Under the pieces are notes generated by a model. The model was not told the DNA's origin. It did no database searches and saw only the letters and a list, made by a program, of their open reading frames with translations. From Macrostomum lignano (lineage: Eukaryota): DNA of 64,000 nucleotides. The stretch's first letter is position 1. The number at the start of each line of letters is the position of its first letter. This document shows, piece by piece, positions 508 through 48,464 of the stretch. The stretch lies in contig NIVC01000782.1 of NCBI GenBank assembly GCA_002269645.1, positions 1 through 64,000 on the forward strand. The letters are read 5' to 3'. The position numbers and the translations under genes are program-made.

Positions 508-1612
508 ATGGCTGCTAATCTTATACTGCTGCTGATTCTGTTCTGGTTGACTGCCGAAACGTCGGCCAACAACTGCTCGGAGAGTAATCGGGTTCGATTC
601 AAAATCGTGCCAACTTGCCCGGAAAATTCAACCATTGCTCTGCTAAAAAAAGTCCAAGATTTCGATCGTAGAAGAATGTGCTTTGGTGTGTGGACTCGAT
701 AGCAACTGTTCTGTCATCTTCCGAAGTGAAGACGGCATTTGCTATTTAGGAAACAGCCAACAAGCTAGTGAACTTATCTCAACGTCGAATTCGTCCATTC
801 CAACCGTTTGTAAAGTCCTTGTCAAAGTTTCCAACAACGGAGATGCACTGATAACAACTGAAACAACTGTAGCCCCTGTGACGACAACTCTGAGTCAATC
901 TGCGGCCACAACAATCAATGCGGCAGTCCAGGGCCTGGGCACTCTGGCCTCAAAGCTGGTCATCCTGTTCGACTTCAGGCAGGGCTACACAAACCTTGTC
1001 AATCCTGCAAAGTACGCCGCCAGTCCCCACGGTGCCGTCAGTCAAAACGGCGAGGGAGTCACCTTCCCTGGTGGAAACAATAACGATTATATCGAAGTTG
1101 ACACCGATGGTAACACCCTGGCGTCTACTTATCTGAGTCACCCGAACTCGTTCACGTTCTACGTGAGACTCATGCGAAACGACCCAAACCACCAGACCTA
1201 TCACTACTTTCATGACTGTTCCACGTCGGCTCTTAATCGGGGAGAGTTCAGCGACAACGGAGGACGACTTCGGGTTGTGCATGCCTTCCCAGCTGCCGCA
1301 AACCAAAACAATTACCAGTTGCTTCGCGAATCAATCAGCAATGTGTTTTTGAACGATAATAGTTTACAACCGGCTTCTGTGGCAGCCGTGTTTGTTGGCA
1401 ACACCCTGAGCAACTTCTACAAAGATGGCGCGTTTCTGCAAACTCCTAACACTCAGTCCAGCACTTACTCTGGAGCTCCGCTTTGCCTGCGTCTGGGCTA
1501 TCATAGCAGTTCATCTCACGCCCTTCGGGGTCGCTTCATCTGCTATGCCGTCGCCAAGGAGGCTCTTACAGTCACTGAGCTCCTGCAGTTGGAGAACTTG
1601 TGCGGAACTTGA
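508..1612 (+). CDS. Secreted PAN/Apple + Thr-rich linker + LamG/ConA-like protein, broken by a 1-nt frameshift (sequencing error or young pseudogene)
   Basis: ORF 508-702 gives a signal peptide (MAANLILLLILFWLTAETSA). Removing one A from the A7 run at 645-651 joins it to ORF 683-1612 as ...LLKKSKISIVEECALVCGLDSNCSVIFRSEDGICYL (PAN C-x3-C-x5-C...C), then TTETTVAPVTTT, then LVILFDF...YIEV...SFTFYVRL...LRLG...LRGRF...ALTVTEL (LamG-3-like). About 367 aa, single exon. Confidence 0.75.
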
Positions 1613-3543
1613 CATCCGAATGCAGCAGAGGCACAAAAATTGTTGCTTTACTAACGAGTAAAACTGAAAAGCTTTTTGTAGTTGCCTTTTAGGCTTCAAT
1701 CTGCTTTACTTAACAAATCAGACACAAAGCCGGAACTATATGAGCAACCATCCTGTGTTGCTTCTTGGTCAAACAAAGTTACTTTTAAGATCTACATCCT
1801 ACGACCTTGTAAGAGAAAATTCGAATAAATTTTTCCTTCCTGGAAAATACTGAAGGTTTCCTTTCTTCCTTTTATCTTCAGTTCTTTTAGTTATTGAGCT
1901 GCTGGGAGCAATGGGGGATAAGTTTGTTCGTCGATTTTACGGGATCAGAAGAAACTAACAATGAAGTTCAACTGTGAAGCTCATAAATCAATAGCACTCT
2001 TTCCACCCTTGGAATTGGTAGGCAATAAGCTTTCCAGCTGAGCTTAAATGACAGAGAGAATATTCTGTGTATTCCATCCCATTCCATTGCAATTGAGCCT
2101 TCGTGGTCCTTGACAACGGCTGGACCGGAGACCATCAGAGGCACCTTAGCAGCTAAGAAAGGTGAATAAAGAGCTTTGAATCTTTGCCCGCAGGCCCCAA
2201 AGGTACATAAAAATGCCTTTTATGATAAGACATGATGAGCAGCTATTCTTTCAAGCCAAGAAGTCCTCAATTCTCTTTGTACAAAACAGGACGGAAAATG
2301 TGAATACGATGCGAGCCAAAATGATATATCCACTGTTACTAATATCGGTTCCAATACGAGGCATTAAAACCAATTTCAGGGATGTTTACAAGGCTTGGAG
2401 TCAAACTATTAATCCCGTTCGTGCATTGATTCTCACAACCAGCGCTGAGTCAATTCTGGTTATTCCTTGTCACACTCTCTATGCCTTGGGGGTTGGCCAA
2501 CGAGCATCAAAGACGGAAAAGATGAGGTTAAAGAAGCATCAAAGCTGATCTATTTTCAGGTTTTTCTCAAGTATCTCCTATCTTCGACCTTCGACCGATG
2601 CGAATTCTCTACACTGTACGAGCTACTTGAACTTGAAACTTCACAAGGTCAAAACTTCATAAACAACCGGCTGCCGTCACCTGTTTTCACTGAATCCTTC
2701 TTAATCGTTCTCGTATTGCATTGTTAGCGGGGGTTCAAATAGTTATAGACTTCAGTACATTGGTTTGGATCTGACCGCAGCTGCACCAATAAAAAACCTG
2801 TACCCGAGATCTGACGCTTTTGTCGGCCTCGAATCCGCTTATTATTGACCTTGTGCGATCGTATTTGTTTTTTTAAATTGGAAAGATTTAAATTTCTGTC
2901 GATACTAACAGGCCTCAGTAATTAATTAATTTAATTAATTAACATCTTAAGTAGAAATAAATATTAAATTCTTTTGCCAACGCACCTCTTCGTGACATGA
3001 AATGTCAGCAGCCAGAGGAAAACTGAAAAGCAGCAATATCGCTGCGTCGAGTAACCGAAAATTGAATAATTTAGCAAGCTTAATTGAGTTCAGTCCTCCA
3101 CTAGCAAGAGAAAAATGACAAAAAACGCGCTAAAAAAATTCATCACGAAGCAGGAATCTTTGTGTGAAACAACGGACTGCTGGTAAACAACCTCAATAAT
3201 TCATATGTAAAAAAACTCTCTCTTCGTGTAACAATCTCCACAAAAAACAATCGGACCAACCTGAAAAGAATTGCGGCTCAAAGTTACACGTAACCGGTTT
3301 AGAAAACATATATGAAAAATCAGTCAAAAAAGAGAACGACACAGTGCAAAGGGAAAAGCTCCACCAGAAAAAAATTCAGAAAGATCGCATCAGCTTGCAG
3401 CAGCAAAACAACAGAAGTAATAAAAAAGCAGCAAAAATTATGGAAAATTAACAAAAATACTTCTTGGGCACGTCAGACCTAGCAAAACGCTCAAAACTAA
3501 GGTTTACAATCAGTTTTTCTGTCATAGTCTCTGCCACAATCAG

Positions 3544-7917: not shown

Positions 7918-8443
7918 AATATCGGATTAATAAAGAACCCTGAAAACATGTCGCTCAACTTCTGCAGCGACCTCTGCTCTCTGGGCGGCTTCCCCTACTT
8001 TGGAGTGCAAAGCACGAAGTTCTGCTTCTGCGGCACAAGCTACGGATTGCATGGAAAGCTTGGCGAGAGCCACTGCAACAAGCAGTGCGCTGGAAACTCG
8101 CTGCAGACTTGCGGAGGTTTCGCCATCAACTCCGTGTTCGCTTTGACCTATCCGAGTAAGTTGAAAACGAATAATTTTGCACCTACGTGTAATTAGGTGT
8201 CACGAATATAAAAAATTATCTAAAACATAATCTGAATCTGATCCTCACTGTGGTGACCAGCAAGACCTCGTCCTGGCCGGCTCCTACCACATCCGTCATG
8301 GACTGCCTGGCCCAGTGCAGCGCCAAAGCCGACTGCCAGGCCGCTGTTTTCTCCAGCGGCTGCTCGCCGGCCACCTGCTGGCGTTCGCCTACCCGCCAGG
8401 CAGCCTGACCGGACCCGACTGGACTCTCTTCGTGCTCGGCTGA
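7918..8443 (+). pseudogene. WSC-PAN paralog A: 5'-truncated, divergent, probably frameshifted
   Basis: 7918-8155 encodes the C-terminal two thirds of a WSC domain (MSLNFCSDLCSLGGFPYFG...CFCG...CNKQCAGNSLQTCGG...NSVF). Phase-1 donor GTAAGT at 8156; an acceptor at 8195-8196 restores the frame into DCLAQCSAKADCQAAVF (PAN). The paralog-like ending HLLAF...DWTLF lies in a shifted frame. No signal-peptide exon found. Confidence 0.65.
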
Positions 8444-10041: not shown

Positions 10042-10633
<592 letters not shown>

Positions 10634-11799: not shown

Positions 11800-11906
11800 T
11801 TCATCCACACCTACCCAGCCTCACAGCTTCATCAAGACCCACTCAGCCTCACAGCTTCATCCAGACCCACTCAGCCTCACAGCTTCATCCAGAACCACTC
11901 AGCCTC
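11800..11906 (-). repeat. 28-bp stop-codon minisatellite of gene B (~4 units including the coding unit)
   Basis: Reverse complement of GAGGCTGAGTGGGTCTGGATGAAGCTGT repeated. Confidence 0.9.
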
Positions 11907-12637
11907 GCTGGCCACCTCGGCGGGCACACCGACGAATCTCAGCAGGCGGCACATGCGGCTCGAAGTCTCAAAGGCGCAGCCCTGACAGTCCAGGCTGGTT
12001 TGGCAGTTGATGGCGCACTCGGTAGGGCTTCTGGCAGCAGCACTGCGGTGAGTTGTTGAATTCGGAAAGCTTGAGATGCTGGGAATCGCTGCGACCTGCA
12101 GCTGCGTCATGGTGTCCTTGACTGTTAGTGGGTAATCGTAGAGGAATAAATATTCATTTCAATAACTTTGAGTCACAAATTAGCCTTTAAATGATAGGAC
12201 ATCAAGACTTCGGTTTACATACCGTGAGAGTAGAATATTTCATAGACAGAGTTTTTGCCCATTCCTCCGCACTTCTGAGAAGAGTTTCCTGTGCAAGACG
12301 TTGAGCAATCGCTCTCCGCCGCTCTACCAAGTCTGCCGTAGGCGGAGCCGCAGCAGCAGTAGTTGCTCCGCTGGGCACCGAAGAATTGAAATCGACCGAT
12401 GGCGCAGATTTGAGCGCACATTTCTAGCGTCATCTCTGCGTTAACTACGAAGGCCAAGTTCAGGACATCGATTTTGTAAGTTCCAAAGCTGGCGATACCT
12501 TGCAGTTCGCTCATGTCTCGGTTGCTGTTATCTCCGTCCGCATAGCAACCAAGGTAGCGAACTCCCAGCAGTTGGGGCGTCAGCATCGCCGAAACGCAGC
12601 CGGTAAAAGCAGTCAAAATCAGCACTGTTGGCGACAT
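11877..12637 (-). CDS. WSC-PAN secreted protein, paralog B (219 aa)
   Basis: Exon1 12637-12223 (signal peptide + WSC: RYLGCYADG...MTLEMCAQIC...YCCCG...CSTSCTGN...CGG...NSVY), GTATGT donor, CAG acceptor, phase 1. Exon2 12121-11877 (245 nt; ECAINCQTSLDCQGCAFETSSRMCRLL...EAEWFWMKL*). Confidence 0.9.
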
Positions 12638-15119: not shown

Positions 15120-15133
15120 CACACACACACACA

Positions 15134-16238: not shown

Positions 16239-17355
16239 ATGACTTACCGGAGAAGATGCACTTTTGAAGTCGTGCTTTCTGTCTGCTTGACAGCTGCAAT
16301 GGCTGCGGAAGTCGTCAGTTCGGGTGTGCAGTTCTCCGCTGCCAGGACGAGCAGTGCTGTCGCTCCGTCGGAGCTTCTGGTGCAGCCCGAAGACAGCGAA
16401 ATCGGCTGCGGCATTGTGTGCAGCCGCAGGTCCGACTGTTTCGGCTTCTACTGGCTGCTCGGCGCGTGCCGGCTGTTCGACTTGAAGGCGTTTTTCAATG
16501 CCAGCGCCTGGGTCAGCATCGGCACGTGTGACGTCTTCGTGCGAGGTGAGTCACCTGATCGCAGTTGCATATTGCGCATCCGCAGTGGCGTTTGCAGAAG
16601 GGAGGCCGTGACCTGAAAAAATCGCGCTCTCCAGAAACTTATTAAAAAAGGACAACAAGCTATACGAATGACATGCATAAGAGCGCAACTTTTGTCCCAT
16701 CTTTGACATGCCTGACACCTGCCGTGGAGATAAGACCCGTCAAGAGACAGCTGGAAGCTCACCAAGAAACAGGGGTGCCCACTAAGAGACAGTGTCCAAC
16801 AGAACACCAAATGCTGGCGCCCCTTGGGGTTGCGCCCCTCCAATTAAAATTCCTGGTTTCGTCAGTGCGCATCTTCGTTGCGTCTGATTAAATGTATTAT
16901 CGCGTGAGCGCAACGACAACAAATAACTGCTTGCATGTACCTAAATTACAGATTTTACACCTAAGAAACTGCCGATTGCCAGCTGCAGCGAAAGCTCATC
17001 GATGGTGTCGTGCAGCCGCGCCATCGACGGCAACACGAATCGATTTTATGATCAAAACTCCTGCACTCACACTCACAACGGCCTCAGTGAGTGGTGGGAA
17101 GGCAGTCTCACGGCTCCATCTCTCGTGTCATTCGTCACCATCTACAACAGGCAGGACTGCTGCGCTAACGCACTAAACAAGTTCGACATTCTTGTGGACG
17201 GGTCTGTGTGCAACCAGGTGAGGCGCAGCACTCCGTTCTCTGTTTCCGACTTTATCTGCAACGCCCACGGCTCGAAAATCCGCATCTTGAGTCGCAGCGA
17301 TCCGGCAGAGCCCGTAACCATCTGCGAGTTCATGGCCTATGGCATCCAAGGTTAG
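16239..17355 (+). CDS. Secreted PAN/Apple + F-type lectin (fucolectin/FTP domain) protein (236 aa)
   Basis: Exon1 16239-16545 (hydrophobic leader VVLSVCLTAAMAA; PAN GCGIVCSRRSDCFGFYWLLGACRLF), GTGAGT donor, TTACAG acceptor, phase 1. Exon2 16952-17355 with RAIDGN...SCTHT...WW...VTIYNRQDCC...TICEFMAYG, typical of the FTP fold. Confidence 0.9.
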
Positions 17356-23203: not shown

Positions 23204-24098
23204 TCACGGCTTCATCCAGACGTACTCGAACTCGCTGGCCAATTCCTCGGGCACAGCGTGGAACTTCAGCAGGCGGCACATGCGGCCTGATGGCGAGAAG
23301 GCGCTGCCCAGGCAGCTCGGGCTGCTGTGGCAGGCGGCGCTGCACTCGAATTCAACTCTGGCTGGGAAACTGCTGTGAGTGATGGAGCTCTGAGCGCTGC
23401 TCATGTTGGGCATCGATGCAGCTGCCAGCTTCTTCGAAATGTTTTCATCTGGTTGGCATAAATGGTGATTTGATGTTTTGCTAGCAATCCAATTGCTGTT
23501 CTTTTGCATAAAATATTGAGCCCCTGGTGCTAAAGCCCCTGGTGCTGGCCTGCATTCAACGCTTCAGCTTACAAGCTTATTCCTTTCAACATACACACCC
23601 GAACGGAACCCATCATGTGCACGACGCCAAAGTTACCCATACTGATAAACATTTCATTCGCTTACACTTCGGGTAGGTGATTTCATAGATTGAATTTCTA
23701 TTGGCACCACCGCACACCTGCGATGCATTCCCGCCGCATTGAAGGTTGCACTGGGAGTCAGGAGCGGCTCCGAGAGAGCCGTAGGCCGACCCGCAGCAGC
23801 AGTACTCGGCAAACTGAACTCCGAAGTAGCGGAATCGGCCGTAATTGCAGATGTCGGCGCACAGTTGCAGCGTCATCTCGCCCGGCTTCTGCACAAAGGC
23901 GGGCACAGTCGGTTTCGTGGCGTACGGACCGAACTTGACAATGCCTTGAAGTCCTCGCAAGTCTCGGTTGCTGTCATCGCCGTCCGCATAGCAGCCGATG
24001 TACTGAAAACCCAGCAGACTCGGCGTTGCGGAGGCCATGCAGCACCAGAGACAAGTGTGCAACAGAAAACAACCAGCGAAGAGGGTTTCTAACGGCAT
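23204..24098 (-). CDS. WSC-PAN secreted protein, paralog C (225 aa)
   Basis: Exon1 24098-23666 (MPLETLFAGCFLLHTCLWCCMASA leader + WSC QYIGCYADG...MTLQLCADIC...YCCCG...CGG...NSIY), GTAAGC donor, phase 1. Exon2 23448-23204 (245 nt; ECSAACHSSPSCLGSAFSPSGRMCRLL...EYVWMKP*). Confidence 0.9.
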
Positions 24099-24573: not shown

Positions 24574-24582
24574 GAACAAGAT

Positions 24583-27573: not shown

Positions 27574-28464
27574 ATGTTTTCAAAAAGCTTTTCTGTCGGT
27601 TACTTGCTGATGTGGGCAGCGTTCGGAAGCTGCTTGACTTCTGTGCCGCCTCATCCGACGGCATTCCGCTACATCGGTTGCTACGTGGATAAAAGGGACC
27701 CCGACATGACCGGCCTCGTTGGGGTCGCTAAATTCGGTCCGTATTCGATCTTGTCAGGATGGCCATCAATTGCGCAAGGCGCTTCAATGACGCTGCAGCT
27801 GTGCAGCCAGATCTGCGCTTATGGGAGATTTCGGTACTTCGGTGCGAGGTTCGGTGGATACTGCTGCTGTGGCAACAGCTACGGCTCGTTCGGTCCAGCC
27901 CCGGCTACTGACTGCTCGCGTCAATGCAAGGGAAACTCATCTCAAATCTGCGGTGGAAACATGAGGAACTCCGTCTACGAAAATATTTATATTGATGGTG
28001 AGAGGGACTTTTTCTAAAAGGAATGTTGCTTCTTTCATGGAGGACACAATACGTTAAAACCTCAAAAACTGTCACACGAAGAAGAACAACAGTGATGACG
28101 TGACTAGTGCTAAGGATATTCTTTTTTTAAACTTTAGGGCAAATGCTTAGATTTTGCAAAAGTGATGGATAGAAATTTATCTTGAATAAATCATACACCA
28201 TATCTATGAAAAACTGTAGCTGGCCAAGCAATGACCAAGCTGCCAGCTACTGCCATGCCGAGCATCTCAGCTTCACTGAGCTCCATCACCCACAGCAGCG
28301 TCTCTGCCAAGAGCGCCATCCAGTGCGCTGCCGCCTGCCAGCGAAGCCCGGACTGTCAGGGCTGCGCCTTCGTGCCTTCGAGCCGCATGTGCCGCCTGCT
28401 GAGATTCGCTGCTGTGCCCGCTGAGGTGGCCAGCGAGGCTGAGTGGGTCTGGATGAAGCCGTGA
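27574..28464 (+). CDS. WSC-PAN secreted protein, paralog D (222 aa)
   Basis: Exon1 27574-27997 (424 nt), GTGAG donor, TAG acceptor, phase 1. Exon2 28220-28464 (245 nt; QCAAACQRSPDCQGCAFVPSSRMCRLL...EAEWVWMKP*). Confidence 0.92.
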
Positions 28465-32249: not shown

Positions 32250-33219
32250 ATGTTTTGGAAAGGCTTTTCTGTCGGCTACTTGCTGATGTGGGTGGCGTTC
32301 GGAAGCTGCTTGACTTCGGTGCCGCCTCATCCGACGGCATTCCGCTACATCGGCTGCTTCGTGGACAAAAAGGACCCCGACATGACAGGCCTTGTTGGAG
32401 TCGCTACAGTCGGTCCGTATTGGACACATTCCGGATGGCCATCAATTGCGCGTGGTGCTTCAATGACACTGCAGCTGTGCAGCCAGATCTGCGCTTATGG
32501 GAGATTTCGATACTTCGGTGCGAGGTACGGTGGAAACTGCTGCTGTGGCAACAGCTACGGCTCGTTCGGTCCAGCCCCGGAGAGTGACTGCTCGTATAAA
32601 TGCAAGGGAAACTCATCTCAAATCTGCGGTGGAGACATGAGGAACTCCGTCTACGAAAATATTTATAATCACGGTGAGAGGGACTTTTTCCGAAGCGAAT
32701 GTTGTTTTGTTTGTCATTGAGAGCACTGGACGTCAAAATATTGTTATAACGTTAAAAACGGTCGCACGAATCAGAATAGCACTGATTAGTTTGTGCTGAA
32801 AATATTCTTTTTGAAACTCTATTGAGAATGCAAAGATTTTGAAAAAGTCATGTATAGCAATTCGCATTGAATAAATCATATAGAGATGTCTATAAAAACA
32901 CACTATCGAATGGGTCTGACCTTCCTGTTTTAGTTGTGTTTTTAATTTAATTCTGTTTTAATTGAACTTTGTAGCTGGCCTAACAGTGGCCAGGCTCCCA
33001 ACTTCTGCCATGCCGAGCATCACAGCTTCACTGAGCTCCATCACCCACAGCAGCGTCTCTGCCGACAGCGCCATTGAGTGCGCTGCCGCCTGCCAGCGAA
33101 GCCCGGACTGTCAGGGCTGCGCCTTCGTGCCTTCGAACCGCATGTGCCGCCTGCTGAGATTCACCGCTGTGCCCGCTGAGGTGTCCAGCGAGGCTGAGTG
33201 GGTCTGGATGAAGCTGTGA
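32250..33219 (+). CDS. WSC-PAN secreted protein, paralog E (222 aa)
   Basis: Exon1 32250-32673 (424 nt), GTGAG donor; exon2 32975-33219 (245 nt), phase 1; followed by only ~1 extra degenerate 28-bp unit. Confidence 0.92.
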
Positions 33220-34239: not shown

Positions 34240-35737
34240 ATGCTGATATTAAAAATACTAGCAATTGATCTCCTGCTGTTCTGGGCAGCCCTTGCTAGGC
34301 TGTGCACCGCTTCCGTACCACCCAACCGCAGGGCATTCGCTACGTGGGTTGCTTTAGGAGGACGTTAGAGGCTCGTATCATTGGAACACTTGCTGCTATC
34401 GGTAGTTTTGTTGAAAGCAATTCGCTCACTGTAAAATTTTGTGCAGTCACATCTGCACCTACGGGCGGTTCCGAAACTTTGGACTTCTATTCGGTTCGTT
34501 ATGCTTGTAGAGAACTGTTAGTTATATCGTAATCAACTACTTAAAGTAATATTCTAAGAAAATCCTATTAAACTTGCAATCTATTTTTAGAATGAGTCAT
34601 GTTCAAACAGAAGTGACTCAGTGCCCTACGTAGGACCAACGTTTTTTTGATCCAAGGACCGGATTTTAGCAGCTGTGTTTGCTCAACTCAATATGTGGTA
34701 ATGCTCAGACATTCATGACTGCTTATTCAAACATGAATGACCTAAGTAAATATCTGATCTCAAACCGGTTTTTCCCGAAAATTATGCTATAAATATAAGT
34801 GAAAATCCGAGTAAAAAATCAGACTCGGAGCGGTCTCAAAGAAGACTTTGAAGACAAAGAAAAGAAGACCAATCTCTGAGGGACGATACTTGTCCAATTG
34901 GTAAGCGCTTACCAAATTTAGTTCTTTGTTGCTAGCGTTAATAAGTTTATTAATTGCTTACGAGAGCCTTTTTGCCGGCCCATTTGAGAAAGACCTCCTT
35001 GTTTCTTAGGATATATATTCCCAGAGGATGTATTTTATTAATTTGAGTTATCCGTCACGTTTCGGACGTAACGGAGAAGACGCCCTTCATGAGGACCTAC
35101 TACAGAAACTCAGAGAATTCAATTTTTAATTTCGAGCTCGAGGACCGTCAGGACTTCTGATTCGCTCTTGTTTTTGCCCGATCAACAGATAAAGTGAAGG
35201 ACTCCAGGAGACAACAGTTCACAGAAGCCAATTATCACTACTACAGTTCAGCAAGTGTCCCCCAGTGTCTATAGAAGTGGGAGTTTTCGAGTGACTGATC
35301 GCCACTCTTGAAACTCTTCATGCTCCTGCGGCCGGACTAGCGGATCCAACTGGAAGGAATTGGAGAGCAACTGTCAATCCGAATGCAGCGGCAATGTGTC
35401 TCAGATGTGCGGCCTTGAACTGGGCGACTCTGTTTATGAAGTAATTTACCCTGTGGGTAAGTAGGGGGGGGGGGCGTCTATTTGACTGCTCAGTAAGAAA
35501 AGCATATCTTTGACAATAATTGGTCTTAAAAATTGATCGAATGTCCTATCCTAACGCGTGTATCACACTCAGATCGCTCTCTGCTGACATGGCTTCAAAG
35601 GGGCAAAAAATGCCGAGCATTTCAAGCTTTATGAAACTGAGATCCGTAACTGACCTTAGCGCAGAAGTCAGCGAAGTCATCGAGTGAGCTGCCACCTGCC
35701 AGAGAAGCCCGGACTGTCTGGGCTGCACCTTGAGTCT
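34240..35737 (+). pseudogene. WSC-PAN paralog F (pseudogene)
   Basis: MLILKILAIDLLLFWAALARLC...RYVGCF; frameshift near 34440; 815-bp insertion inside the WSC exon; exon resumes CSCGRTSG...CQSECSGNVSQMCG...SVYEVIYPV|GTAAGT. In the PAN exon the first Cys codon is TGA (~35685) and the 3' end is deleted into the repeat array. Confidence 0.88.
34506..35320. mobile_element. Probable solo LTR (815 bp) inserted in the WSC exon of F
   Basis: Begins TGTAGAG and ends CTCTTCA (TG...CA, imperfect inverted ends), flanked by TGCT on both sides (34502-34505, 35321-35324). Removing it restores F-G-S-L-C-S-C-G. Confidence 0.8.
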
Positions 35738-36272
35738 GTGAGGTTCAGTGGGTCTGGATGAAGCTGTGAGGCTGAGTGGATCTGGATGAAGCTGTGAGGC
35801 TGAGCGGATCTGGATGAAGCTGTGAGGCTGAATGGGTCTGGATGAAGCTGTGAGGCTGAGCGGATTTGGATGAAGCTGTGAGGCCGAATGGGTCTGGATG
35901 AAGCTGTGAGACTGAGCGGATCTGGATGAAGCTGTGAGGCTGAATGGGTCTGGATGAAGCTGTGAGACTGAGCGGATCTGGATGAAACTGTGAAGCTGAG
36001 TTGGTCTGAATGAAGCTGTGAAGCTGAGTGTGTCTGGATGTAGCTGTGAGGCTGAGTGGGTCTGGATGCAGCTGTGAGGCTGAGCGGATCTGGATGAAAC
36101 TGTGAAGCTGAGTGGGTCTGAATGAAGCTGTGAAGCTGAGTGTGTCTGGATGCAGCTGTGAGGCTGAGTGGGTCTGGATGAAGCTGTGGAGGCTGAGTGG
36201 GTCTGGATGAAGCTGTGAGGCTGAGTGGGTCCGGATGAAGCTGTGAAGCAGAGTCGGTCTGGATGAAACTGC
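35738..36272 (+). repeat. 28-bp minisatellite after F (~19 units)
   Basis: Direct. Confidence 0.95.
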
Positions 36273-37237: not shown

Positions 37238-38184
37238 ATGTTTTCAAAAAGCTTTTCTGTAGGCTACTTGCTGATGTGGGCAGCGTTCGGAAGCTGCTTG
37301 ACTTCCGTGCCGCCTCATCCGACGGCATTCCGCTACATCGGTTGCCACGTGGATAAAAGGGACCCCGACATGACCGGTCTCGTTGGAGTCGCTACATTCG
37401 GTCCGTATTCGACATATCCCGGATGGCCATCTCTTTTGCGAAACGCTTCAATGACGCTGCAGCTGTGCAGCCAGATCTGCGCTTATGGGAGATTTCGATA
37501 CTTCGGTGCGAGGCTCAGTGAATACTGCTGCTGTGGCAACAGCTACGGCTCGTTCGGTCCAGCCCCGGCTAGTGACTGCTCGTATAAATGCAAGGGAAAC
37601 TCGTCTCAAATCTGCGGTGGAAACATGAGGAACTCCGTCTACGAAAATATTTATAATCACGGTGAGAGGGACTTTTTCTCATGCAAATTTTGTTTTGCCT
37701 GTCAGGACGGCAACGTCGTTAAAACATCAAAAACCGTAACACAAAGCAGGATTTTTTATGATTTCATACTGAAAATATTCTTTTTAAAACCAAACTGCAA
37801 ATTCCAACTGGAAAAGTCAGGGCAATCAGTGTTCGTTGAATAAATCCCAGATATTTCCATACATTCGTAAACAGATTTATTATTTCTATAAGTTTTTGAG
37901 TAAAAATTTCTAAATTCTGTTTTAATACAACATTTGTAGCTGGCCAAGCAGTGACCAAGCTGCCAGCTTCTGCCATGCCGAGCATCTCAGCTTCACTGAG
38001 CTCCATCACCCACAGCAGCGTCTCTGCCAAGAGCGGCATCCAGTGCGCTGCCGCCTGCCAGCGAAGCCCGGACTGTCAGGCCTGCGCCTTCGTGCCTTCG
38101 AGCCGCATGTGCCGCCTGCTGAGATTCACCGCTGTGCCCGCTGAGGTGGCCAGCGAGGCTGAGTGGGTCTGGATGAAGCTGTGA
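37238..38184 (+). CDS. WSC-PAN secreted protein, paralog G (222 aa)
   Basis: Exon1 37238-37661 (424 nt); exon2 37940-38184 (245 nt); phase-1 GT-AG intron. Confidence 0.92.
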
Positions 38185-38628
38185 GGCTGAGTAGGTCTGG
38201 ATGAAGCTGTGAGGCTGAGTAGGTCTGGATGAAGCTGTGAGACTGAGTGGGTCTGGATGAAGCTGTGAGGCTGAATGGGTCTGGATGAAGCTGTGAGGTT
38301 AAGCGGGTCTGGATGAAGCTGTGAGGTTAAGCGGGTCTGGATGAGGCTGTGAGAATGAGAGGGTCTGGATGAAGCTGTGAGGCTGAGTGGGTCTGGATGA
38401 GGCTGTGAGAATGAGAGGGTCTGGATGAAGCTGTGAGGCTGAGTGGGTCTGGATGAGGCTTTGATAATGAGAGGGTCTGGATGAAACTGTGAGACTGAGT
38501 GGGTATGAATGGGGCTGTGAGACTGAGCGGGTCTGGATGAGGCTGTGAGAATGAGAGGGTCTGGATGAAACTGTGAGACTGAGTGGGTATGGATGGAGCT
38601 GTGAGGCTGAGCGGGTCTGGGTAAACTA
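38155..38628 (+). repeat. 28-bp stop-codon minisatellite of gene G (~17 units)
   Basis: Direct; first unit is coding. Confidence 0.95.
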
Positions 38629-39635: not shown

Positions 39636-40842
39636 ATGCAAAGATAAAAATACTACCAATTAATCTCCTGCTGTTCTGTGCAGCTCTTGGTAGGCTGTGC
39701 ACCACTTCCGTACCACCGCAATCGCAACGCATTCGCTACGTCGGTTGCTATGCGGAAAGTTACAAAGATCTGAGAGGAATTTTGGGCTCTGGTCTCTTGC
39801 TGCGGTGTCGCGCAGGGAGCTCCAGTGGTGCCGGTGTCCGCAGCGCAGCCCCCCTCCGGAGAGTCCAGGAGGTGGTTTGTCGTCCACCCGGTAGCCCTTG
39901 GGTAGCGGACGAGCTGGCAGAGATTCTCGAGCCAGAAAACATCGGAGAGATCCGGGTTTGGGCCGAGGTAGGCGAGCCTAGTAAAGGCGGGGCATTCACA
40001 GATAAAGTGCTCCGCATTCTCGACACCGGAGAGGCAGAAGGGGCATTCCTCACTGCGGATTTTTCCATGGAGGTGACGATGCCTGGCAAAACAGCCATGA
40101 CCCAAAATGGCCATGTTCACCGCCCTGATGTCCCTGCAGTAGAGTCCAAGCAGGGCCCAGCGCAAGGCGGGGGAAGGACAGGGGACAACCGCACGGGATT
40201 GCCGGTAGTCGGGGGCGTTAGCCCAGGGCTTTGGTCTCGCTGGGCCATTTAAATGCTGTCGGCGGTTTTTTGAAAGTAATTCGCTCACTGTGGAGCTGTG
40301 CCGCCCGAGCTGCTCATATGGGCGGTTCCGCTACTTTGGTTGTCAATTCGATTCGTTTTGCTACTGCGGCAGGATGTACGGATCAAATGGAAAGGATTTT
40401 GAGAGCAACTGCCAATCCAAATGCAGCGGCAATGTATCTCAGATATGCGGTGGGGAAGTGAGCAACTCTATTTATGCATGAAGTAACTTATCATGTGGGT
40501 AAGTCCGAGTTTGAATGCTGGGTAAAAACGTAAATTTGACAGTAATTAATCTTAGCAATTGACAATATTCCTATCCTAACACATGTACCACCACACTCAG
40601 ATCGCTCTCTGCTGACAAGACTGCAAGTTGTAAAAATGCCAACCGTTTCAAGCTACAAGAAGCTGAAATCCGTCACCGCCCTTAGCACAGAAGTCAGCAG
40701 TGTCTTCCAGTGCGCCTCCTTCTGCCAGCGAAGCCCGGACTGTCAAGGCTGCGCCTTTGTGCCTTCGAGCCGCATGTGCCGCCTGCTGAGATTCACCGCT
40801 GAGGTGGCTAGCGAGACTGAGCGGGTCTGGATGATGTTGTGA
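39636..40842 (+). pseudogene. WSC-PAN paralog H (pseudogene, sister of F)
   Basis: Damaged start (ATG CAA AGA TAA), leader [12 protein letters not shown]...RYVGCYAE, ~450-bp LINE insertion, WSC resumes ([10 protein letters not shown]...CYCG...CSGNVSQICGG), 4-nt insertion before the GTAAGT donor. PAN exon 40601-40842 is open. Confidence 0.88.
39805..40250 (-). mobile_element. 5'-truncated LINE 3' end (same family as 29270-31250) inserted in H
   Basis: RQSRAVVP...[19 protein letters not shown] aligns with RQSRGAVP...RDIRAATMTISGHGCFSRH; C-terminal CPFC-x8-H-x4-C knuckle. Boundaries approximate. Confidence 0.85.
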
Positions 40843-41036
40843 GGCTGAGTGGGTCTGGATGAAGCTGTGAGGCTGAGTGGGTCTGGATGAAGCTGTGAGG
40901 CTGAGTGGGTCTGGATGAAGCTGTGAGGCTGAGTGGGTCTGGATGAAGCTGTGAGGCTGAGTGGGTCTGGATGAAGCTGTGAGGCTGAGTGGGTCTGGAT
41001 GAAGCTGTGAGGCTGAGTGGGTCTGGATAAAACTAT
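40813..41036 (+). repeat. 28-bp stop-codon minisatellite of H (8 units, six perfect)
   Basis: Direct. Confidence 0.95.
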
Positions 41037-41825: not shown

Positions 41826-43542
41826 ATGCAAGCGCCTATAATTTTAGTTGCCTTCCTGTCTGCATGGGTGCCGTTGCTGGCTTCTGAGCCGCCCCAGTTT
41901 CGAGAAGTTCGCTACATCGGATGCTTCGCTGACAGCAGAAGTAACAGCGATCGAGACCTGCAAGGACTGGAAGGCGTCATTGCGTTAGACCGGTACACAG
42001 TTGACCGCAAGTACAGCGCCTTCGTCAAGAGCAGGAAAATGACACTGCAGAAGTGCAACCGGATCTGCTCATACGGTCGGTTCCGCTATTTTGGTGTCCA
42101 AGCAGCTTTTTTTTGCTGCTGCGGATCTGCGTACGGGTCGCTTGGCGCGGTCGATGAGAGAAAATGCGCCGCTCCGTGCAGTGGGAACGCGTCGCAGGTG
42201 TGCGGTGCCAGCTGGACCAATTCCATCTTTGAAATCGTCTATAAGCCTAGTAGGTAATCGCTTATTGCATGCATTGCAAGGTGGCTAAACTCACAAAACA
42301 TGTCAGTTTCACTGAAGCTTGAATGTTGAGCTTCCTAATTTTATCTGAAACAAGTATGGGTATGAAACAAGAAATGCTACCGGAGGCCTGAAATAAAGCA
42401 AATTATACTGATACTGCTTTTGTCCGACTAAAAATCTCATAGAATGAAGATATAGATGGGGCCATAGACAGCACTGAGAAGCCTGACTGAGAGACAGGCA
42501 AACCTGGAAGGCCGCTTAAAAAATTGAAGCCTATTCCTAGTTGAATTTCTAGTTTAGCTGTGAATATTCAGGGTTAAACTAAGAATGAGTGAAATTAAAG
42601 ATCGAGCCCTAGTTAAACTGACCGTTTGAATTAAAAGCACTTAAACAAAGCTGTACTTCAATTGTTATTCCTACTACTTCTAGGGCTTTTCATAACTAAA
42701 ATAATTAATCATCTTACTAAATTTTATTAAACTACTAACCGCAGTAGTAAAATTCAGGTATAGGTCCTAAATTTTGGATGTTCGAGTTTGGATGTCCACT
42801 TAAAGGTTTGCCTGCCTCTCAGTCTTGGGCTGTCTATGGCCCAACCTATCTTTATTCTGTGGGGTTCTAACTTTGGATTTGACCCTCTTCCCGTGAAGAA
42901 ACCCTTTTCACGGTGCAAGTTGGTGTTGGTGTTCCTTTTTGTTGATTGTCGATTTTTTGAAAAACAACTTTTTATAAAATGGTTAGGAATTTACACTTCA
43001 CTGTGCCTGGGGGATAGGCCTTCAAGGCCGCTAATTACACGAGCAGAGCCAAGCCGAGATTCCAATTTAGCACCAAATTAATTTGACCGCACTTGGAATC
43101 GAGCCTGGGCCGCTGGCACATCAGAGCGCCGCTAGTAGAGTACTAGTCTAAGGACCCCTGAAATCGACAGGATCTGGGATATCCATTGATTTCTTTATGC
43201 CTTAATGGGAAGTTCATCATTTGAAAACTACAAAACCTACGTTTGGTTGGCTGATTAATTCCTATAATTATGAGTACGTCTTGCAATTCTCCCACAGCTG
43301 AAAAAATCCTGACCAAGCTACCAGTGACCGACATGCCAAGCATCTCAGTCTTGGCGAGCGCTTCTGCCTATCGCAACTCTACGGCGAAGAGCGCCATCCA
43401 ATGCGCCGCCACCTGCCATCGAAGCCCGGACTGTCAGGGCTGCGCCTTCGTGCCTTCGAGCCGCATGTGCCGCCTGCTGAGATTCGCCGCTGTGCCCGCT
43501 GACGTGGCCAGCGAGGCTGAGTGGGTCTGGATGAAGCTGTGA
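41826..43542 (+). CDS. WSC-PAN secreted protein, paralog I (222 aa)
   Basis: Exon1 41826-42249 (424 nt; MQAPIILVAFLSAWVPLLAS + WSC), GTAGGT donor, 1048-nt phase-1 intron, CCCACAG acceptor. Exon2 43298-43542 (245 nt), followed by ~2-3 more 28-bp units. Confidence 0.9.
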
Positions 43543-44938: not shown

Positions 44939-45495
44939 ACCCCGCCGGAAAGCAACGGGGAGCAGTGTGGATGTAACATTTGTCAGCATTGAAGCGCTTG
45001 ACACCAATTGCCTCAATGGATGGAATCTGATAACATCGTCCTGAGTCGCATCATGACCACATCCATCCTTTTCTGCATTTAACTCCGTCCAGACTCAGCT
45101 TATTCAGCTGTTGCACTACTAGTGGGAGATCCGCTGCAGAATTCAGCTTCCGTCTACCGCACTAGTAGTCGCACGTCTCCACGCTTATAGGTTTTAGGCG
45201 TTCCGCTAGTTCCATCACAGGCAGTTTGCCTGTTGTAAATGAAAAGAAGCTGTGAAATTAATTTGTTAGATCATTTAACAATCTATAACTCAGCACAAAA
45301 CTGCAACAAAGCAAGCCACCTTACAGAGAGCCAAGTCCAAGAACACCAGACTCGCACTTCTGATCTGCTGGGAACACTACTTTCTGCAGCAATCCTTTTG
45401 TCTCTATCTGCAACTGAAACTACTTACGAACGTCCATTTGCTAGTACGTGCAGATCTTGTCTGGTGTCAGTGCTACTGTGCAGTTCAGACTACTC

Positions 45496-45625
45496 AGGCT
45501 GAGTGGGTCTGGATGAAGCTGTGAGGCTGAGTGGGTCTGGATGAAGCTGTGAGGCTGAGTAGGTCTGGATGAAGCTGTGAGGCTGAGTAGGTCTGGATGA
45601 AGCTTTGAGGCTGAGCTGGGTGAAG
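45496..45625 (+). repeat. Orphan 28-bp array (~4.5 units) with no PAN exon upstream
   Basis: Same unit. The downstream flank 45625-46160 is homologous to the flank of gene I (43600-44130). Confidence 0.9.
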
Positions 45626-48291
45626 GCGCAAGAGACTGAAGTGCTGATTACGGAGGCAAATTACAATAAGCGTTATTAAAATCGATACATTGAAACCCCC
45701 CAAGAACATTGCTGCTGACCCTGAAATCGAGTTCCCCTTCTCTGTCCTAAATGAAGTTTCATGTTAACCCTGCAATGTTTTTTGAGTTGTGAGAAAAAAT
45801 CTAATATCTAAGTAGCTATAGAAAAACAAAAAATACAAATCTTTTTAATGCTTTCTGGCTATCGATAACAATTTAGGTTGATTCACTCTTAATTCTTATA
45901 TTTTGCAGATATTCATGTATTTATGGCAAATACGCATGCACAATTGGATACATAAATATTACCTATCTCTGGATGTAGAAGAATGTGGGATGCATAAGCT
46001 GTGAGTTCCCTTTAAAAAAGAGAAAAGTTGAAGGAAGCCTTCTATTCAGGTGCTGTCCATCTGTCCATCCCAAGTTTGGTTGTGCGATTCTGACTCTGTC
46101 ATGAGAAAGCAAACCCACTGCATTGTCTGCAAGAGCTTTTCCGGTTGGTAACTGATGCAGCGTTCAGAACCTGTGAATGCGTCTCTCAGTCAGACTAGTG
46201 CCGAAAAAGTTTGCTGCAGAAATTCGAGAAACAAAGAAGAAATGCATCCGCAGATGCAAGCCGTTGTTTGCTTTTAAAATCGATGAAGAAGCGATGTTAA
46301 AAGAAGAAAAGCTAAAAAACTTCTCTTTTTTAGAGTTAAAAATAGAGGAAAACCTTGGAGCTGCTTTGGCAACTGGGCGCTTTACTTCCATGGACAGCTG
46401 AAGTCCATGAAAGCTACACTTGATTTTCCTAGAAATCTTGGCCGGTGAAGAATGTGTGTGTTCTTGGTAGCACAGAAAATCCACGGAATGCTCAATCGCC
46501 TGATTAATAAAGGGATCTGATGCAGAACTAAAGTGCTAAGTAGCCAGCAGCTAGTTAAGCAGATAAAATCTAAAGTACTTGTTTTATTAGATTAAAATAG
46601 CATCGAGCAATTTCTTAGCCACGTTGCATGTACCGTCACGGAAAAATTTCTGATCGAACAGTGCAAGTTCGAACAAAATTGGTTGAGCCGTTTTTGCTAA
46701 AATCGATCGCATACCTAGATACCGACAGAATAGTTTTAGTATATGGAAAGATTTAGTATATTTAGATTTAGATATAATAAACGATTGTTGCTTGTTTTTT
46801 TATTAAAAAATCAAGTCAAGAAATATTGGAAACATTCTGAACACATCCTCTCTTGATGGTTTGTTAAGACGGAATACATCGGACTAACACTGGAAATAAC
46901 CTTTTCGACCGCTATCTAGTAGAATTTGGTTTAGCTCAATTTTAGCTTAATCGTAAGTTTCTTTTTGGGACATATATACTACTATTCCCTACCTTCACAC
47001 AAAGAGTAGTTTAAGCGCAAATGCGATCCGATTGTTTATTACCAGTGTATCTCTCAAGCCAAACACGCAACTGAGCTATACAAAACAAAAACATCTGTCC
47101 ATATCAACATAACCCTGAAATTTTCGTCTCTCGTAAGCATGTGCGCATTGACTCAAATTCAAGATTACCAGCGGAGATAGAAGTTTGATGCTGGCTAGGG
47201 GGTGGATGCGAAAAAGTACCTCTTTATTAAGCCGGTTTACACTGTAGTGACCTTCGCGAACTTTCCCGATTATTGTACTATTAAAAATTCTACGCCTTTC
47301 CTGAAATTTCTATTAAGTTCACAATATTATTTCTACACCGTTTAGGCATATTAAATTATTAATTTACATGAATTCTTGTACTGTAACACTTAGTCACTAT
47401 TTGAGCAATACGTACATACAACTTAGTTTTGTTATAACGATGCACGTTTTTTCCAGAACTTTCCGGAAACCCCAATTCATCTATAAATACACGAAACCAG
47501 AAATACAATTATTTTAAGCCTTTTCAATCACTCGATTGACTCAAACAAACAGAGCATTCGACTGCCAAACCTTTACAACATTACCTAAGGGTTACTCAGT
47601 ATTTAGTAGTCCCTCTGTGACATTACTGCTAGTGACTACGCGGTCAAACATTGCTCAAATCAGATGTAAAATGGTGTTACGATAACTGCACACGATGATA
47701 TCATTCACAATACTAACAATTAAGTATTGTTTCACATGAAAGATGTACAAAGCGACAAAGAATGATTTAGAAACCATAGTGCAATCACGCAACTAGAATT
47801 GTCATACCAACAAATCAGCAGTGAGGACAAAATTTTATATTACACAGACATTTAGCCGTTGTATAACGTCGTTATCCCTCGATGCAATGTAAAAGCACAT
47901 TTTTTCAGCGACATTTATAGGCGTCGTGGGGTGCAAACTGAAGGTAACGGGCTCAGGTGGTTGTTTATTATGACAAATGAGTCCACCTTCAACTGAAAAA
48001 TATTGCAGTTGTTCTGTAAAGGTAATTGTAACGACAATTATTGAAGAATTACTTTAAATCACTTAGGATAATAGTGGATCTCAGCTAGCGCCCTGCAGAA
48101 AAGACCTGTCTAGAGACTTTCAGGAGAACACAAAGGCGCGCATATAATAGGACCTACGGACAACGAATATGTTCAGCACTTTGTCTGTCAAATGCCGTTT
48201 TCATTATCAGGGACCGGCTACGCTACCTCAGGCTGAACTCTCCATTATCAAGGTCCGCCAGCCAAACAGCATCCCAAGACTCATCCAGTTT

Positions 48292-48464
48292 GAATATGGG
48301 CCGAATGCAGAGACTCCAACCAGGCCAGTCATATCGGGGTCCCTTTTATCCACGAAGCAACAGATGTAGCGGAATGCCATCGGATGAGGCGGCACCGAAG
48401 TCAAGCAGCTTCCGAACACCGCCCACATCAGCAAGTAAATGACAGCAAAGCTTTGTGAAAACAT
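48292..48464 (-). pseudogene. Truncated inverted copy (J) of a D/E/G-type WSC exon
   Basis: MFSQSFAVIYLLMWAVFGSCLTSVPPHPMAFRYICCFVDKRDPDMTGLVGVSAFGPYS, then homology stops abruptly. Confidence 0.88.

What the first reader, a model, noticed from the sequence alone, without database searches (positions are those of the whole stretch)
508..48464. Candidate modular lectin repertoire: a PAN module paired with three different glycan-binding domains in one locus
Seen: within 48 kb there are 12 genes or pseudogenes for small proteins (leaders present in all except the 5'-truncated A), built as PAN+LamG/ConA-like, PAN+F-type lectin, or WSC+PAN (10 copies; J is only a 5' fragment). None has a TM segment. 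Established: WSC, FTP and ConA-like folds bind carbohydrates, and PAN/Apple domains mediate protein or glycan interactions and dimerisation. Inference: this is a secreted pattern-recognition, mucus or adhesion system in which PAN is a shared adaptor and the partner domain sets ligand specificity. I know of no description of such a family but cannot search to confirm that.
Basis: partly seen in the sequence, partly recalled or inferred. Interest (0 to 1): 0.85.

Follow-up and report, generated by a model that had tools for sequence, protein, structure and literature searches.

The report
Flatworm cluster of secreted WSC–PAN proteins
A 48-kb stretch of a Macrostomum-like flatworm genome holds a tandem family of small secreted proteins with a variable WSC domain and a near-constant PAN/Apple domain; it is known elsewhere only from unnamed M. 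lignano database entries and may encode gland secretions such as seminal fluid, though expression is untested.

Summary
Between 508 and 48464 there are ten WSC+PAN loci. Six are intact two-exon genes of 219–225 aa. Three are two-exon pseudogenes and one is a 5' fragment. There is also an extra PAN-tail fragment, one conserved PAN-like + F-type-lectin gene, and one orphan ORF ("gene A").

WSC, PAN and FTP are confirmed by Pfam, PDB sequence search or an AlphaFold/Foldseek model. Gene A's "PAN" and "LamG" calls stay below threshold, and the ORF is frameshifted with no homologue.

Every full-length WSC+PAN relative examined is from Macrostomum lignano, at 66 % identity or less. No searched paper describes the architecture.

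Paralogues are saturated at synonymous sites in the WSC exon. Their last ~130 nt of PAN coding sequence is 83–100 % identical among most copies. That stretch runs into a 28-bp minisatellite derived from the last nine codons plus stop, and M. lignano has the same consensus unit. This looks like a variable head with a gene-converted constant tail.

"PAN as a shared adaptor for three lectin domains" is only partly supported, because WSC is itself a PAN-fold variant. The likeliest role is a gland secretion, possibly seminal fluid, since many M. lignano prostate-limited transcripts are small WSC proteins. Expression is untested.

The parts
508..1612 (+). Gene A. Single-exon ORF with leader MAANLILLLILFWLTAETSA, a weak PAN-like Cys motif, a Thr/Ser-rich linker and a ~230-aa C-terminal region. 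It has a +1 frameshift in an A7 run at 645-651. It is an orphan.
   Evidence: Searches give the frames and the repaired translation. Pfam finds only PAN_3 at 14.5 bits and Laminin_G_3 at 14 bits. No homologue was found and no PDB match.
7918..8407 (+). WSC-PAN pseudogene. It holds the C-terminal ~75 aa of WSC (7918-8166) and a divergent PAN-like exon of the M. lignano P0013-16 type, split over two frames (8298-8351 and 8369-8407).
11877..12637 (-). c12, an intact WSC-PAN gene of 219 aa. Exon 1 is 12637-12223, the intron is phase 1, exon 2 is 12121-11877.
   Evidence: WSC 44.4 bits, PAN_1 19.6 bits.
16239..17355 (+). PAN-like + F-type lectin gene of 236 aa. Exon 1 is 16239-16545, the intron is phase 1, exon 2 is 16952-17355.
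   Evidence: Searches give the model. Pfam PF22633 scores 43 bits. PDB FBP32 matches at 1e-21 and 1K12 at 8e-9. The M. lignano orthologue P0018 is 77 % identical. The N-terminal module aligns to the family PAN profile at hhalign E 3e-5.
23204..24098 (-). c23, an intact but divergent WSC-PAN gene of 225 aa. Exon 1 is 24098-23666 and exon 2 is 23448-23204. One PAN cysteine is replaced by Ser.
27574..28464 (+). c27, an intact WSC-PAN gene of 222 aa. Exons are 27574-27997 and 28220-28464.
   Evidence: WSC 45.5 bits, PAN_1 26.5 bits. AlphaFold model has pLDDT 82.9.
32250..33219 (+). c32, an intact WSC-PAN gene of 222 aa. Exons are 32250-32673 and 32975-33219.
34323..35822 (+). WSC-PAN pseudogene. 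The WSC is broken and there are stops in both WSC and PAN. The PAN tail merges into the 28-bp array.
37238..38184 (+). c37, an intact WSC-PAN gene of 222 aa. Exons are 37238-37661 and 37940-38184.
39647..40839 (+). WSC-PAN pseudogene. It has no in-frame ATG, a unique 476-bp GC-rich insertion at 39790-40265 inside the WSC exon, and a 3-codon deletion in PAN.
41826..43542 (+). c41, an intact WSC-PAN gene of 222 aa. Exons are 41826-42249 and 43298-43542, with a 1-kb phase-1 intron.
   Evidence: WSC 47.2 bits, PAN_1 20.8 bits.
45487..45621 (+). Orphan PAN-tail fragment (last ~20 codons) followed by 4.5 copies of the 28-bp unit.
48234..48464 (-). 5' fragment (71 aa) of a c27-type WSC exon, 69 % identical to c27.
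38155..38620 (+). Example of the 28-bp minisatellite GAGGCTGAGTGGGTCTGGATGAAGCTGT, here in 16.6 copies. It begins in the last nine codons plus stop of the PAN exon. Other arrays are at 11800-11906, 28435-28595, 35736-36280, 40813-41028, 43513-43574 and 45496-45621.
   Evidence: The same consensus follows the M. lignano gene in L001 at 10721-11219. PolyA signals lie downstream of the arrays.

Best explanation
SHOWN
- The locus is a tandem gene cluster, found so far only in Macrostomum, for small secreted cysteine-rich proteins. Each has a signal peptide, a WSC domain and a C-terminal PAN/Apple domain.
- It has grown by local duplication. c27, c32 and c37 are ~4.7-5.0-kb repeats.
- It is being eroded by TE insertion and frameshifts. 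Six copies are intact; three are pseudogenes and two are fragments.
- The WSC domain diverges fast, with a hot spot in the loop at residues 51-70.
- The last ~130 nt of the PAN exon is kept near-identical among paralogues. A 28-bp minisatellite born from its last nine codons plus stop follows it.
- A conserved PAN-like + F-type-lectin gene and an orphan ORF lie among the WSC-PAN genes.

INFERRED
- The near-identity of the PAN tail is most simply explained by gene conversion (concerted evolution).
- The mature ~195-aa proteins act extracellularly as binders. The variable WSC head would set ligand specificity (glycan or protein).
- The constant PAN tail would provide a common interaction, such as oligomerisation, a shared partner, or granule packaging.
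- The most likely biological setting (about 40 %) is a reproductive-gland secretion, i.e. seminal fluid. Mucosal or immune lectins are the main alternative.
For: GENE MODELS
- Conserved GT/AG sites and a phase-1 intron in all six genes.
- Leaders present and no TM segment.

DOMAINS
- Pfam WSC and PAN_1 hits.
- M. lignano multi-unit models score about 100 bits for PAN_1.
- AlphaFold model: pLDDT 82.9, pTM 0.78.
- Foldseek: Kremen WSC at E 1e-6, yeast Wsc1 at TM 0.77, then FXI/prekallikrein apple, HGF N-domain and the SML-2 lectin.

LINEAGE RESTRICTION
- A profile search of 1.84 billion representative proteins was run.
- All 12 full-length WSC+PAN hits looked up are M. lignano.
- Sampled non-Macrostomum hits whose match extended past the WSC part carry WSC only.

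SELECTION AND MOSAICISM
- dN/dS is 0.55-0.65 among recent duplicates, so they are constrained.
- WSC pS is 0.6-0.8 against PAN-core pS of 0.08-0.24 between divergent paralogues.
- In a 30-nt sliding window the last ~130 nt are 83-100 % identical to c27 in every copy except c23, while the intron and linker are 26-70 %.
- The same 28-bp consensus occurs in M. lignano.

SEMINAL-FLUID LEAD
- At least 20 of 76 prostate-limited M. lignano transcripts have WSC-type best hits, are 0.5-1.1 kb long, and map to multi-copy loci (PMC5977470 Table S1; PMC6953679).
- F-type lectins are known in fertilisation as well as in immunity (PMC12221842).
Against: - There is no expression evidence for this subfamily in any species.
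- None of the 18 RNAi-tested seminal-fluid candidates' primers or gene IDs match the M. lignano WSC-PAN members.
- Three supplement searches for the family's Mlig gene IDs gave nothing: two found no match and one paper had no supplement text held.
- Positive selection on the variable loop is not demonstrated. pN/pS is 0.65-1.3 against 0.37-0.54 elsewhere, Fisher p = 0.26.
- Ligand binding is entirely inferred. WSC domains do not always bind sugars.
- The window's FTP copy lacks one Arg of the fucose triad.
- Gene conversion cannot be cleanly separated from nucleotide-level constraint, because no orthologous neutral divergence could be calibrated.
Confidence: 0.6

Rival explanations
1. This is a secreted pattern-recognition, mucus or adhesion lectin repertoire in which one PAN module is a shared adaptor and the partner domain (WSC, FTP or LamG) sets glycan specificity.
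For: - The proteins are secreted and Cys-rich, and they carry WSC and F-type lectin domains.
- PAN/apple lectins exist, for example SML-2.
- Tandem expansion with pseudogenes is typical of immune lectin families.
- F-type lectins act in immunity.
Against: - The LamG partner is not verified and gene A is a frameshifted orphan.
- The PAN-like modules of the three gene types differ in position and share barely detectable similarity.
- WSC is itself a PAN fold.
- The fucose triad is incomplete in the window's FTP copy.
- No immune or mucus expression data exist.
- The nearest characterised Macrostomum WSC proteins are prostate-limited.
Confidence: 0.25
2. The extreme conservation of the last ~130 nt of the CDS and the 28-bp array reflects selection on the nucleotide sequence itself rather than gene conversion alone. 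Candidates are a 3' regulatory or localisation element, repeated binding sites for an RNA-binding protein or small RNA, or a recombination signal.
For: - The 28-bp consensus is identical, and the last ~120 nt are 90-96 % identical, between the window and M. lignano.
- The only clear orthologue pair (FTP) is just 77 % identical in protein.
- By hand count from the alignment, only 2 synonymous differences occur in the last 33 codons between c41 and the M. lignano gene.
Against: - There is no RNA-structure signal (z = -0.02) and no Rfam family.
- Array copy number ranges from 0-1 to about 19, so the array is dispensable for some intact genes.
- The number of synonymous sites is small.
- Neutral divergence between the species could not be calibrated.
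- Concerted evolution plus protein-level constraint may be enough.
Confidence: 0.15
3. The cluster is a decaying, largely non-functional remnant, and the 'intact' copies are recently dead or never expressed.
For: - Five of the eleven WSC/PAN loci or pieces are pseudogenes or fragments, and TEs are abundant.
- Gene A is frameshifted.
- The exact proteins are not in public collections.
Against: - Six copies keep full ORFs, splice sites, all core cysteines and leaders.
- dN/dS is below 1.
- The family and the FTP gene are conserved in M. lignano.
Confidence: 0.07

Closest known systems
Prostate-limited WSC-domain seminal-fluid-protein candidates of Macrostomum lignano (e.g. Mlig-pro4, -11, -28, -38, -46, -49, -63; Weber et al. 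2018, PMC5977470; Weber et al. 2019, PMC6953679)
   Same: Same genus-level lineage. They are small secreted WSC-domain proteins encoded by short transcripts from multi-copy loci.
   Different: No PAN domain has been reported for them. Primer-encoded peptides and gene IDs of the 18 tested candidates do not match the WSC-PAN subfamily. Expression of WSC-PAN genes is unknown.
Uncharacterised M. lignano 'WSC domain-containing proteins' (e.g. A0A1I8GZN4, A0A1I8J167, Mlig013640.g1)
   Same: Same two-domain architecture, a phase-1 intron shown for Mlig013640.g1 (L001), the same C-terminal ...SSRMCRLLRFAAVPAEVASEAEWVWMKL tail and the same 28-bp 3' array.
   Different: At most 66 % identical to the window proteins. 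They are dispersed over many contigs as well as in arrays. They are only automatic annotations.
Kremen1/2 WSC domain and fungal WSC proteins (yeast Wsc1 sensor, Serendipita WSC3 lectin)
   Same: Same WSC fold with its eight-cysteine pattern. These are the top Foldseek hits.
   Different: Those are membrane receptors or sensors, or multi-WSC cell-wall lectins. None has a C-terminal PAN domain, and Kremen's WSC binds protein.
Tandem apple/PAN proteins (factor XI/prekallikrein apple domains, apicomplexan microneme lectins SML-2, MIC4, EtMIC5, HGF N-domain)
   Same: Same PAN/Apple fold. The two-domain model aligns over two consecutive apple domains. Some of these proteins are galactose lectins.
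   Different: There is no WSC-type L5 loop. The proteins are unrelated in sequence and context. Foldseek E-values are only 2e-3 to 0.2.
F-type lectins (eel agglutinin 1K12, striped bass FBP32 3CQO)
   Same: The FTP exon matches at E 1e-21 and 8e-9. The His and the first Arg of the fucose triad are present.
   Different: The second Arg is Ala in the window copy. The domain is preceded by a PAN-like module, and it is a single copy.

Membership tests
WSC domain (Pfam PF01822) | Score above the Pfam gathering threshold | tested here: met
   44-53 bits against 27.8 for c12, c27 and c41.
WSC domain (Pfam PF01822) | Eight conserved cysteines and the WSC variant of the PAN fold | tested here: met
   C36, C77, C81, C97, C99, C114, C118 and C126 are invariant or nearly so. 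Foldseek hits Kremen 5FWS at E 1.6e-6 and Wsc1 7PZ2 at TM 0.73-0.77. Disulfide connectivity was not tested.
PAN/Apple domain (Pfam PF00024), C-terminal module of the WSC-PAN genes | Score above the Pfam gathering threshold | tested here: met
   c27 scores 26.5 bits against 21.4. c41 (20.8) and c12 (19.6) fall just below. M. lignano arrays P0022 and P0024 score 104 and 99 bits over five stretches each.
PAN/Apple domain (Pfam PF00024), C-terminal module of the WSC-PAN genes | Helix packed on a beta-sheet, with a C-x3-C on the helix linked to the central strand | tested here: met
   The model has helix 174-183 carrying C177 and C181, followed by strands 189-193 and 198-202. Foldseek hits FXI apple, HGF N-domain and SML-2 at probability 0.75-0.99 but E of 2e-3 or weaker.
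PAN/Apple domain, N-terminal module of the FTP gene | Significant similarity to a PAN profile or a PAN fold | tested here: inconclusive
   No Pfam hit. hhalign against the family's PAN profile gives E 3e-5, probability 73 %. The best PDB sequence hit is the EtMIC5 apple domain at E 0.26. The AlphaFold model is unusable at pLDDT 39.
PAN/Apple domain, N-terminal module of gene A | Significant similarity to a PAN profile | tested here: not met
   PAN_3 scores 14.5 bits against 21.1, E 0.033. hhalign gives probability 1.9 %, E 0.025. Only the C-x3-C-x5-C...C spacing fits.
Laminin G / ConA-like lectin (gene A C-terminus) | Profile match or fold | tested here: not met
   Laminin_G_3 scores 14.1 bits against 27.6, E 0.053 and is absent from the repaired full-length scan. 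There is no PDB sequence match and no homologue.
F-type lectin domain | Profile or sequence match to F-type lectins | tested here: met
   PF22633 scores 43-45 bits against 27.8. FBP32 matches at 1e-21, the fucolectin-related protein at 5e-10 and 1K12 at 8e-9.
F-type lectin domain | Fucose-binding triad H-x24-R-x-D-x4-R/K | tested here: not met
   The window copy reads ...CTHTH...NRQDCCANAL. The His and the first Arg are present, but the second Arg is Ala. M. lignano homologues keep ...ERL or ...HRL.
Macrostomum seminal fluid proteins (prostate-limited transcripts) | Expression limited to prostate gland cells, or identity with a listed Mlig-pro transcript | tested here: not met
   No match to the primers or gene IDs of the 18 listed candidates. 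The other 58 candidates and the expression of WSC-PAN genes cannot be tested with these tools.

The most novel reading that the evidence does not exclude
The WSC-PAN genes form a 'variable head / constant tail' secreted recognition system. The constant PAN 3' exon segment and its coding-derived 28-bp minisatellite would be maintained at the nucleotide level across Macrostomum species because they act as a recombination or gene-conversion (or RNA-regulatory) module. That module would keep the tail uniform while allowing WSC heads to diversify. In that case it would be a built-in diversification architecture for reproductive or immune recognition proteins.
Probability: 0.12. Interest if true: 0.75.

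Novelty: new variant of a known kind. Interest (0 to 1): 0.42.

Why it matters
Macrostomum is a leading model for sexual selection and sexual conflict in hermaphrodites, and WSC-domain proteins dominate its annotated seminal-fluid candidates.

This locus defines a distinct subfamily (WSC+PAN) that has so far been found only in this genus. It also supplies a ready set of gene models: six intact paralogues, graded pseudogenes and a neighbouring F-type lectin gene.

The evolutionary pattern is clear. The domain likely to bind ligand diverges freely, while the tail is homogenised. If the genes prove to be prostate-expressed, they give a tractable case of how seminal-fluid repertoires diversify. 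If they are epidermal or gut-expressed, they would be a new flatworm lectin family.

The coding-derived minisatellite shared between species is a small unexplained curiosity that can be tested directly.

Tried and rejected
1. Exact look-up of seven window proteins in the 15-billion-protein collection. None is present, so species and transcription could not be obtained that way.
2. Primer-to-protein and primer-to-DNA matching of the 18 RNAi-tested M. lignano seminal-fluid candidates against the family. Only the generic WSC motif 'CFCGN' matched.
3. Searches for the family's Mlig gene IDs or WSC/PAN annotations in the full text of papers and in the supplements of three Macrostomum papers. Nothing was found, and one of the three papers had no supplement text held.
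4. AlphaFold of the PAN-FTP protein with a 5-sequence alignment gave pLDDT 39 and is unusable.
5. Homology search for gene A found no hit. A PDB sequence search found no meaningful hit.
6. An RNA-structure test of the conserved 3' CDS plus array gave z = -0.02. Rfam on the whole window found nothing, and no tRNAs were found.
7. A test for positive selection in the hypervariable WSC loop showed raised but non-significant pN/pS.
8. Synteny with M. lignano. The three loci retrieved (L001-L003) do not reproduce the window's arrangement. The FTP paralogue there stands alone.
9. An interdomain disulfide between the extra WSC Cys98 and PAN Cys190 was considered. It was dropped because the two residues do not co-vary across the family.

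Full report
**What the window is.** The sequence is eukaryotic. It has exon-sized ORFs, many micro- and minisatellites, and transposon ORFs. The transposon ORFs are a mariner transposase at 51630-52667, a THAP/P-element-like transposase at 59428-61371(-), and an RNase H fragment at 29299-29973(-). [quoted passage not shown] Identity is at most 66 % for the WSC-PAN genes and 77 % for the FTP gene. None of the window's proteins is present verbatim in public collections. The window is therefore most likely from another Macrostomum species. This is an inference.

Six WSC-PAN genes are intact:
- c12: 12637-11877(-)
- c23: 24098-23204(-)
- c27: 27574-28464
- c32: 32250-33219
- c37: 37238-38184
- c41: 41826-43542

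Each has two exons separated by a phase-1 intron with canonical GT/AG sites. Each encodes 219-225 aa with a hydrophobic leader and no other TM-grade segment.

The remaining copies are damaged:
- 7918-8407 lacks the 5' half of WSC and has a frameshifted PAN-like exon.
- 34323-35822 has stops in both exons.
- 39647-40839 has no in-frame ATG, a unique 476-bp insertion and a 3-codon deletion.
- 48464-48234(-) is a 71-aa 5' fragment.
- An extra PAN-tail fragment lies at 45487-45549.

Gene A (508-1612) is not 5'-truncated. It has an ATG and leader at 508, but a +1 frameshift in an A7 run at 645-651. This could also be an assembly error. The statement that leaders are present in all copies but A is therefore inaccurate.

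**Domain tests.**
- WSC scores 44-53 bits (cut-off 27.8). The C-terminal module scores 26.5, 20.8 and 19.6 bits for PAN_1 (cut-off 21.4).
- M. lignano gene models that fuse 5-7 tandem units score about 100 bits for PAN_1 over five stretches, so the family call is solid.
- An AlphaFold model of c27 built on 18 family sequences has pLDDT 82.9 and pTM 0.78.
- Foldseek places its first domain with the Kremen and yeast Wsc1 WSC domains (E 1e-6; TM 0.73-0.77). The whole model, or its second domain, matches factor XI/prekallikrein apple domains, the HGF N-domain and the Sarcocystis PAN lectin SML-2.
- The published Wsc1 structure shows that WSC is itself a PAN/Apple-fold variant (PMC9024836). These proteins are in effect two PAN-superfamily modules in tandem.
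- The FTP exon is a genuine F-type lectin domain: PF22633 at 43-45 bits, FBP32 at 1e-21, eel agglutinin at 8e-9.
- The window copy has Ala at the position of the second Arg of the fucose-binding triad. M. lignano homologues keep the Arg.
- The N-terminal module of the FTP gene gets no Pfam hit. It does align to the family's PAN profile (hhalign E 3e-5, probability 73 %). A structure prediction failed at pLDDT 39.
- Gene A's PAN-like and LamG-like calls are both sub-threshold. It has no homologue and no PDB match.

**Distribution.** A profile of the family was searched with HMMER against 1.84 billion representative proteins. It returned 9,692 hits, almost all generic multi-WSC proteins. All twelve hits that cover WSC+PAN in a single stretch and were looked up are M. 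lignano. Sampled non-Macrostomum hits whose match extended past the WSC part carry WSC only. In M. lignano the family is spread over at least ten gene loci. It occurs both as isolated genes (L001) and in arrays (fused models P0022 and P0024; two copies 9 kb apart in L003). No paper in the searchable library mentions PAN/Apple or F-type lectins in Macrostomum.

**How the family evolves.**
- c27, c32 and c37 are recent duplicates spaced 4.7-5.0 kb apart, and about 170-250 bp of upstream sequence is conserved among them. Their overall dN/dS is 0.55-0.65.
- Variability concentrates in a WSC loop (residues 51-70) and in the interdomain linker (141-170). The YGRFRYFG core and PAN residues 181-210 are the most conserved.
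- The loop's pN/pS (0.65-1.3) is higher than in the rest of WSC (0.37-0.54), but not significantly so (p = 0.26).
- The most striking result is a mosaic. Between divergent paralogues the WSC exon is saturated at synonymous sites (pS 0.6-0.8), but the PAN core has pS 0.08-0.24.
- A DNA alignment of exon 2 shows the switch inside the exon. Intron and linker are 26-70 % identical. In every copy except c23, the last ~130 nt of CDS are 83-100 % identical. Against the M. lignano gene they are 90-96 % identical.
- Every such gene ends in ...EAEWVWMKL*. Those 28 nt are the first unit of a minisatellite, GAGGCTGAGTGGGTCTGGATGAAGCTGT. Across all the arrays it ranges from 0-1 to about 19 copies, and in the intact genes it lies upstream of the first polyA signal.
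- The same consensus, in 17.8 copies, follows the M. lignano gene in L001.
- Gene conversion of the 3' part of the PAN exon, possibly seeded by the arrays, is the simplest explanation. Extra nucleotide-level constraint cannot be excluded, because I could not calibrate neutral divergence between the two species.
- The region shows no RNA-structure signal (z = -0.02) and no Rfam match.

**What it probably does.** These points are shown directly: small secreted Cys-rich two-domain proteins, purifying selection overall, a fast-changing WSC surface loop and a uniform PAN tail. The following is inferred: the WSC head sets ligand specificity and the PAN tail provides a shared interaction.

For biological context the best lead is the literature on M. 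lignano.
- In the in situ screen for prostate-limited transcripts, at least 20 of 76 have WSC-type best hits and are 0.5-1.1 kb long (PMC5977470 Table S1).
- Several of these (Mlig-pro4, -11, -28, -38, -46, -49, -63) map to multi-copy loci.
- Mlig-pro46 knock-down lowered paternity share as second mate (P2; z = -2.97, adjusted p = 0.06), but none of the screen's effects stayed significant after FDR correction (PMC6953679).
- Another prostate transcript has two WSC domains (PMC4490696).
- However, none of the 18 candidates with published primers or gene IDs is a WSC-PAN member. I found no expression record for this subfamily.

I therefore put the seminal-fluid or reproductive-secretion reading at about 40 %. 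I put a mucosal or immune lectin role at about 25 %. The rest goes to other gland secretions or loss of function.

- WSC+PAN is real, abundant and undescribed in the literature.
- 'PAN as a shared adaptor for three glycan-binding domains' is not borne out. One partner (LamG) is unverified and sits in a frameshifted orphan.
- The PAN-like modules of the three gene types are not the same exon family.
- WSC is itself a PAN fold.
- The architecture already exists as dozens of auto-annotated M. lignano proteins dispersed genome-wide.

Noticed in passing
window 11800-11906, 28435-28595, 35736-36280, 38155-38620, 40813-41028, 43513-43574, 45496-45621; L001 10721-11219: A 28-bp minisatellite (GAGGCTGAGTGGGTCTGGATGAAGCTGT) has as its first unit the last nine codons plus stop of the PAN exon. 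Copy number ranges from 0-1 to about 19. The identical consensus follows the M. lignano homologue.
   Followed up: yes
window 17120-17150 (FTP exon, motif NRQDCCANAL): The window's F-type lectin copy has Ala where the second Arg of the fucose-binding triad sits. All M. lignano homologues keep Arg, so fucose binding may be altered or lost in this species.
   Followed up: partly
window 645-651: The only defect in the 367-codon gene A is one extra A in an A7 homopolymer. This could be a sequencing or assembly error rather than a true pseudogene.
   Followed up: partly
window 58364-61371 (-): A 647-aa ORF with THAP, P-element HTH and TNP-like RNase H domains is followed by a 295-aa ORF with no Pfam hit. 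Together they look like a nearly intact P-element/THAP9-like transposon.
   Followed up: partly
window 51630-52667 (+): An uninterrupted 345-aa mariner/Tc1-type transposase ORF, possibly an active copy. It is preceded by a 28/55-bp tandem repeat at 51136-51415.
   Followed up: partly
window 39790-40265: A unique 476-bp GC-rich insertion splits the WSC exon of the 39.6-kb copy. The antisense strand carries an ORF with a CPFC...HFICECP zinc-knuckle-like motif, reminiscent (from memory) of the 3' end of a non-LTR retrotransposon. It has no Pfam hit.
   Followed up: partly
window 10042-10633: A 592-bp almost perfect (GTA)197 trinucleotide repeat. Other long satellites are a 25/50-bp unit at 8710-9706, a 32-bp unit at 14598-15011, a 34-bp unit at 24959-25433 and a 30-bp unit at 56614-57288.
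   Followed up: no
window c12, c23, c27, c32, c37, c41 (residue 98 of c27: YCCCG): The window's WSC domains carry an extra ninth cysteine (CCC). Many, though not all, M. lignano members have C-F/S/V-C instead. This may be a free thiol for intermolecular disulfides. It does not co-vary with the fifth PAN cysteine.
   Followed up: partly
window 24000-28000, ORFs 25668-26362: This is the most GC-rich stretch of the window (0.51). It has three overlapping ORFs of 134-204 aa, one of them Ser/Thr/Ala/Pro-rich. The one ORF tested (25668-26282) has no Pfam hit. Its nature is unknown.
   Followed up: no
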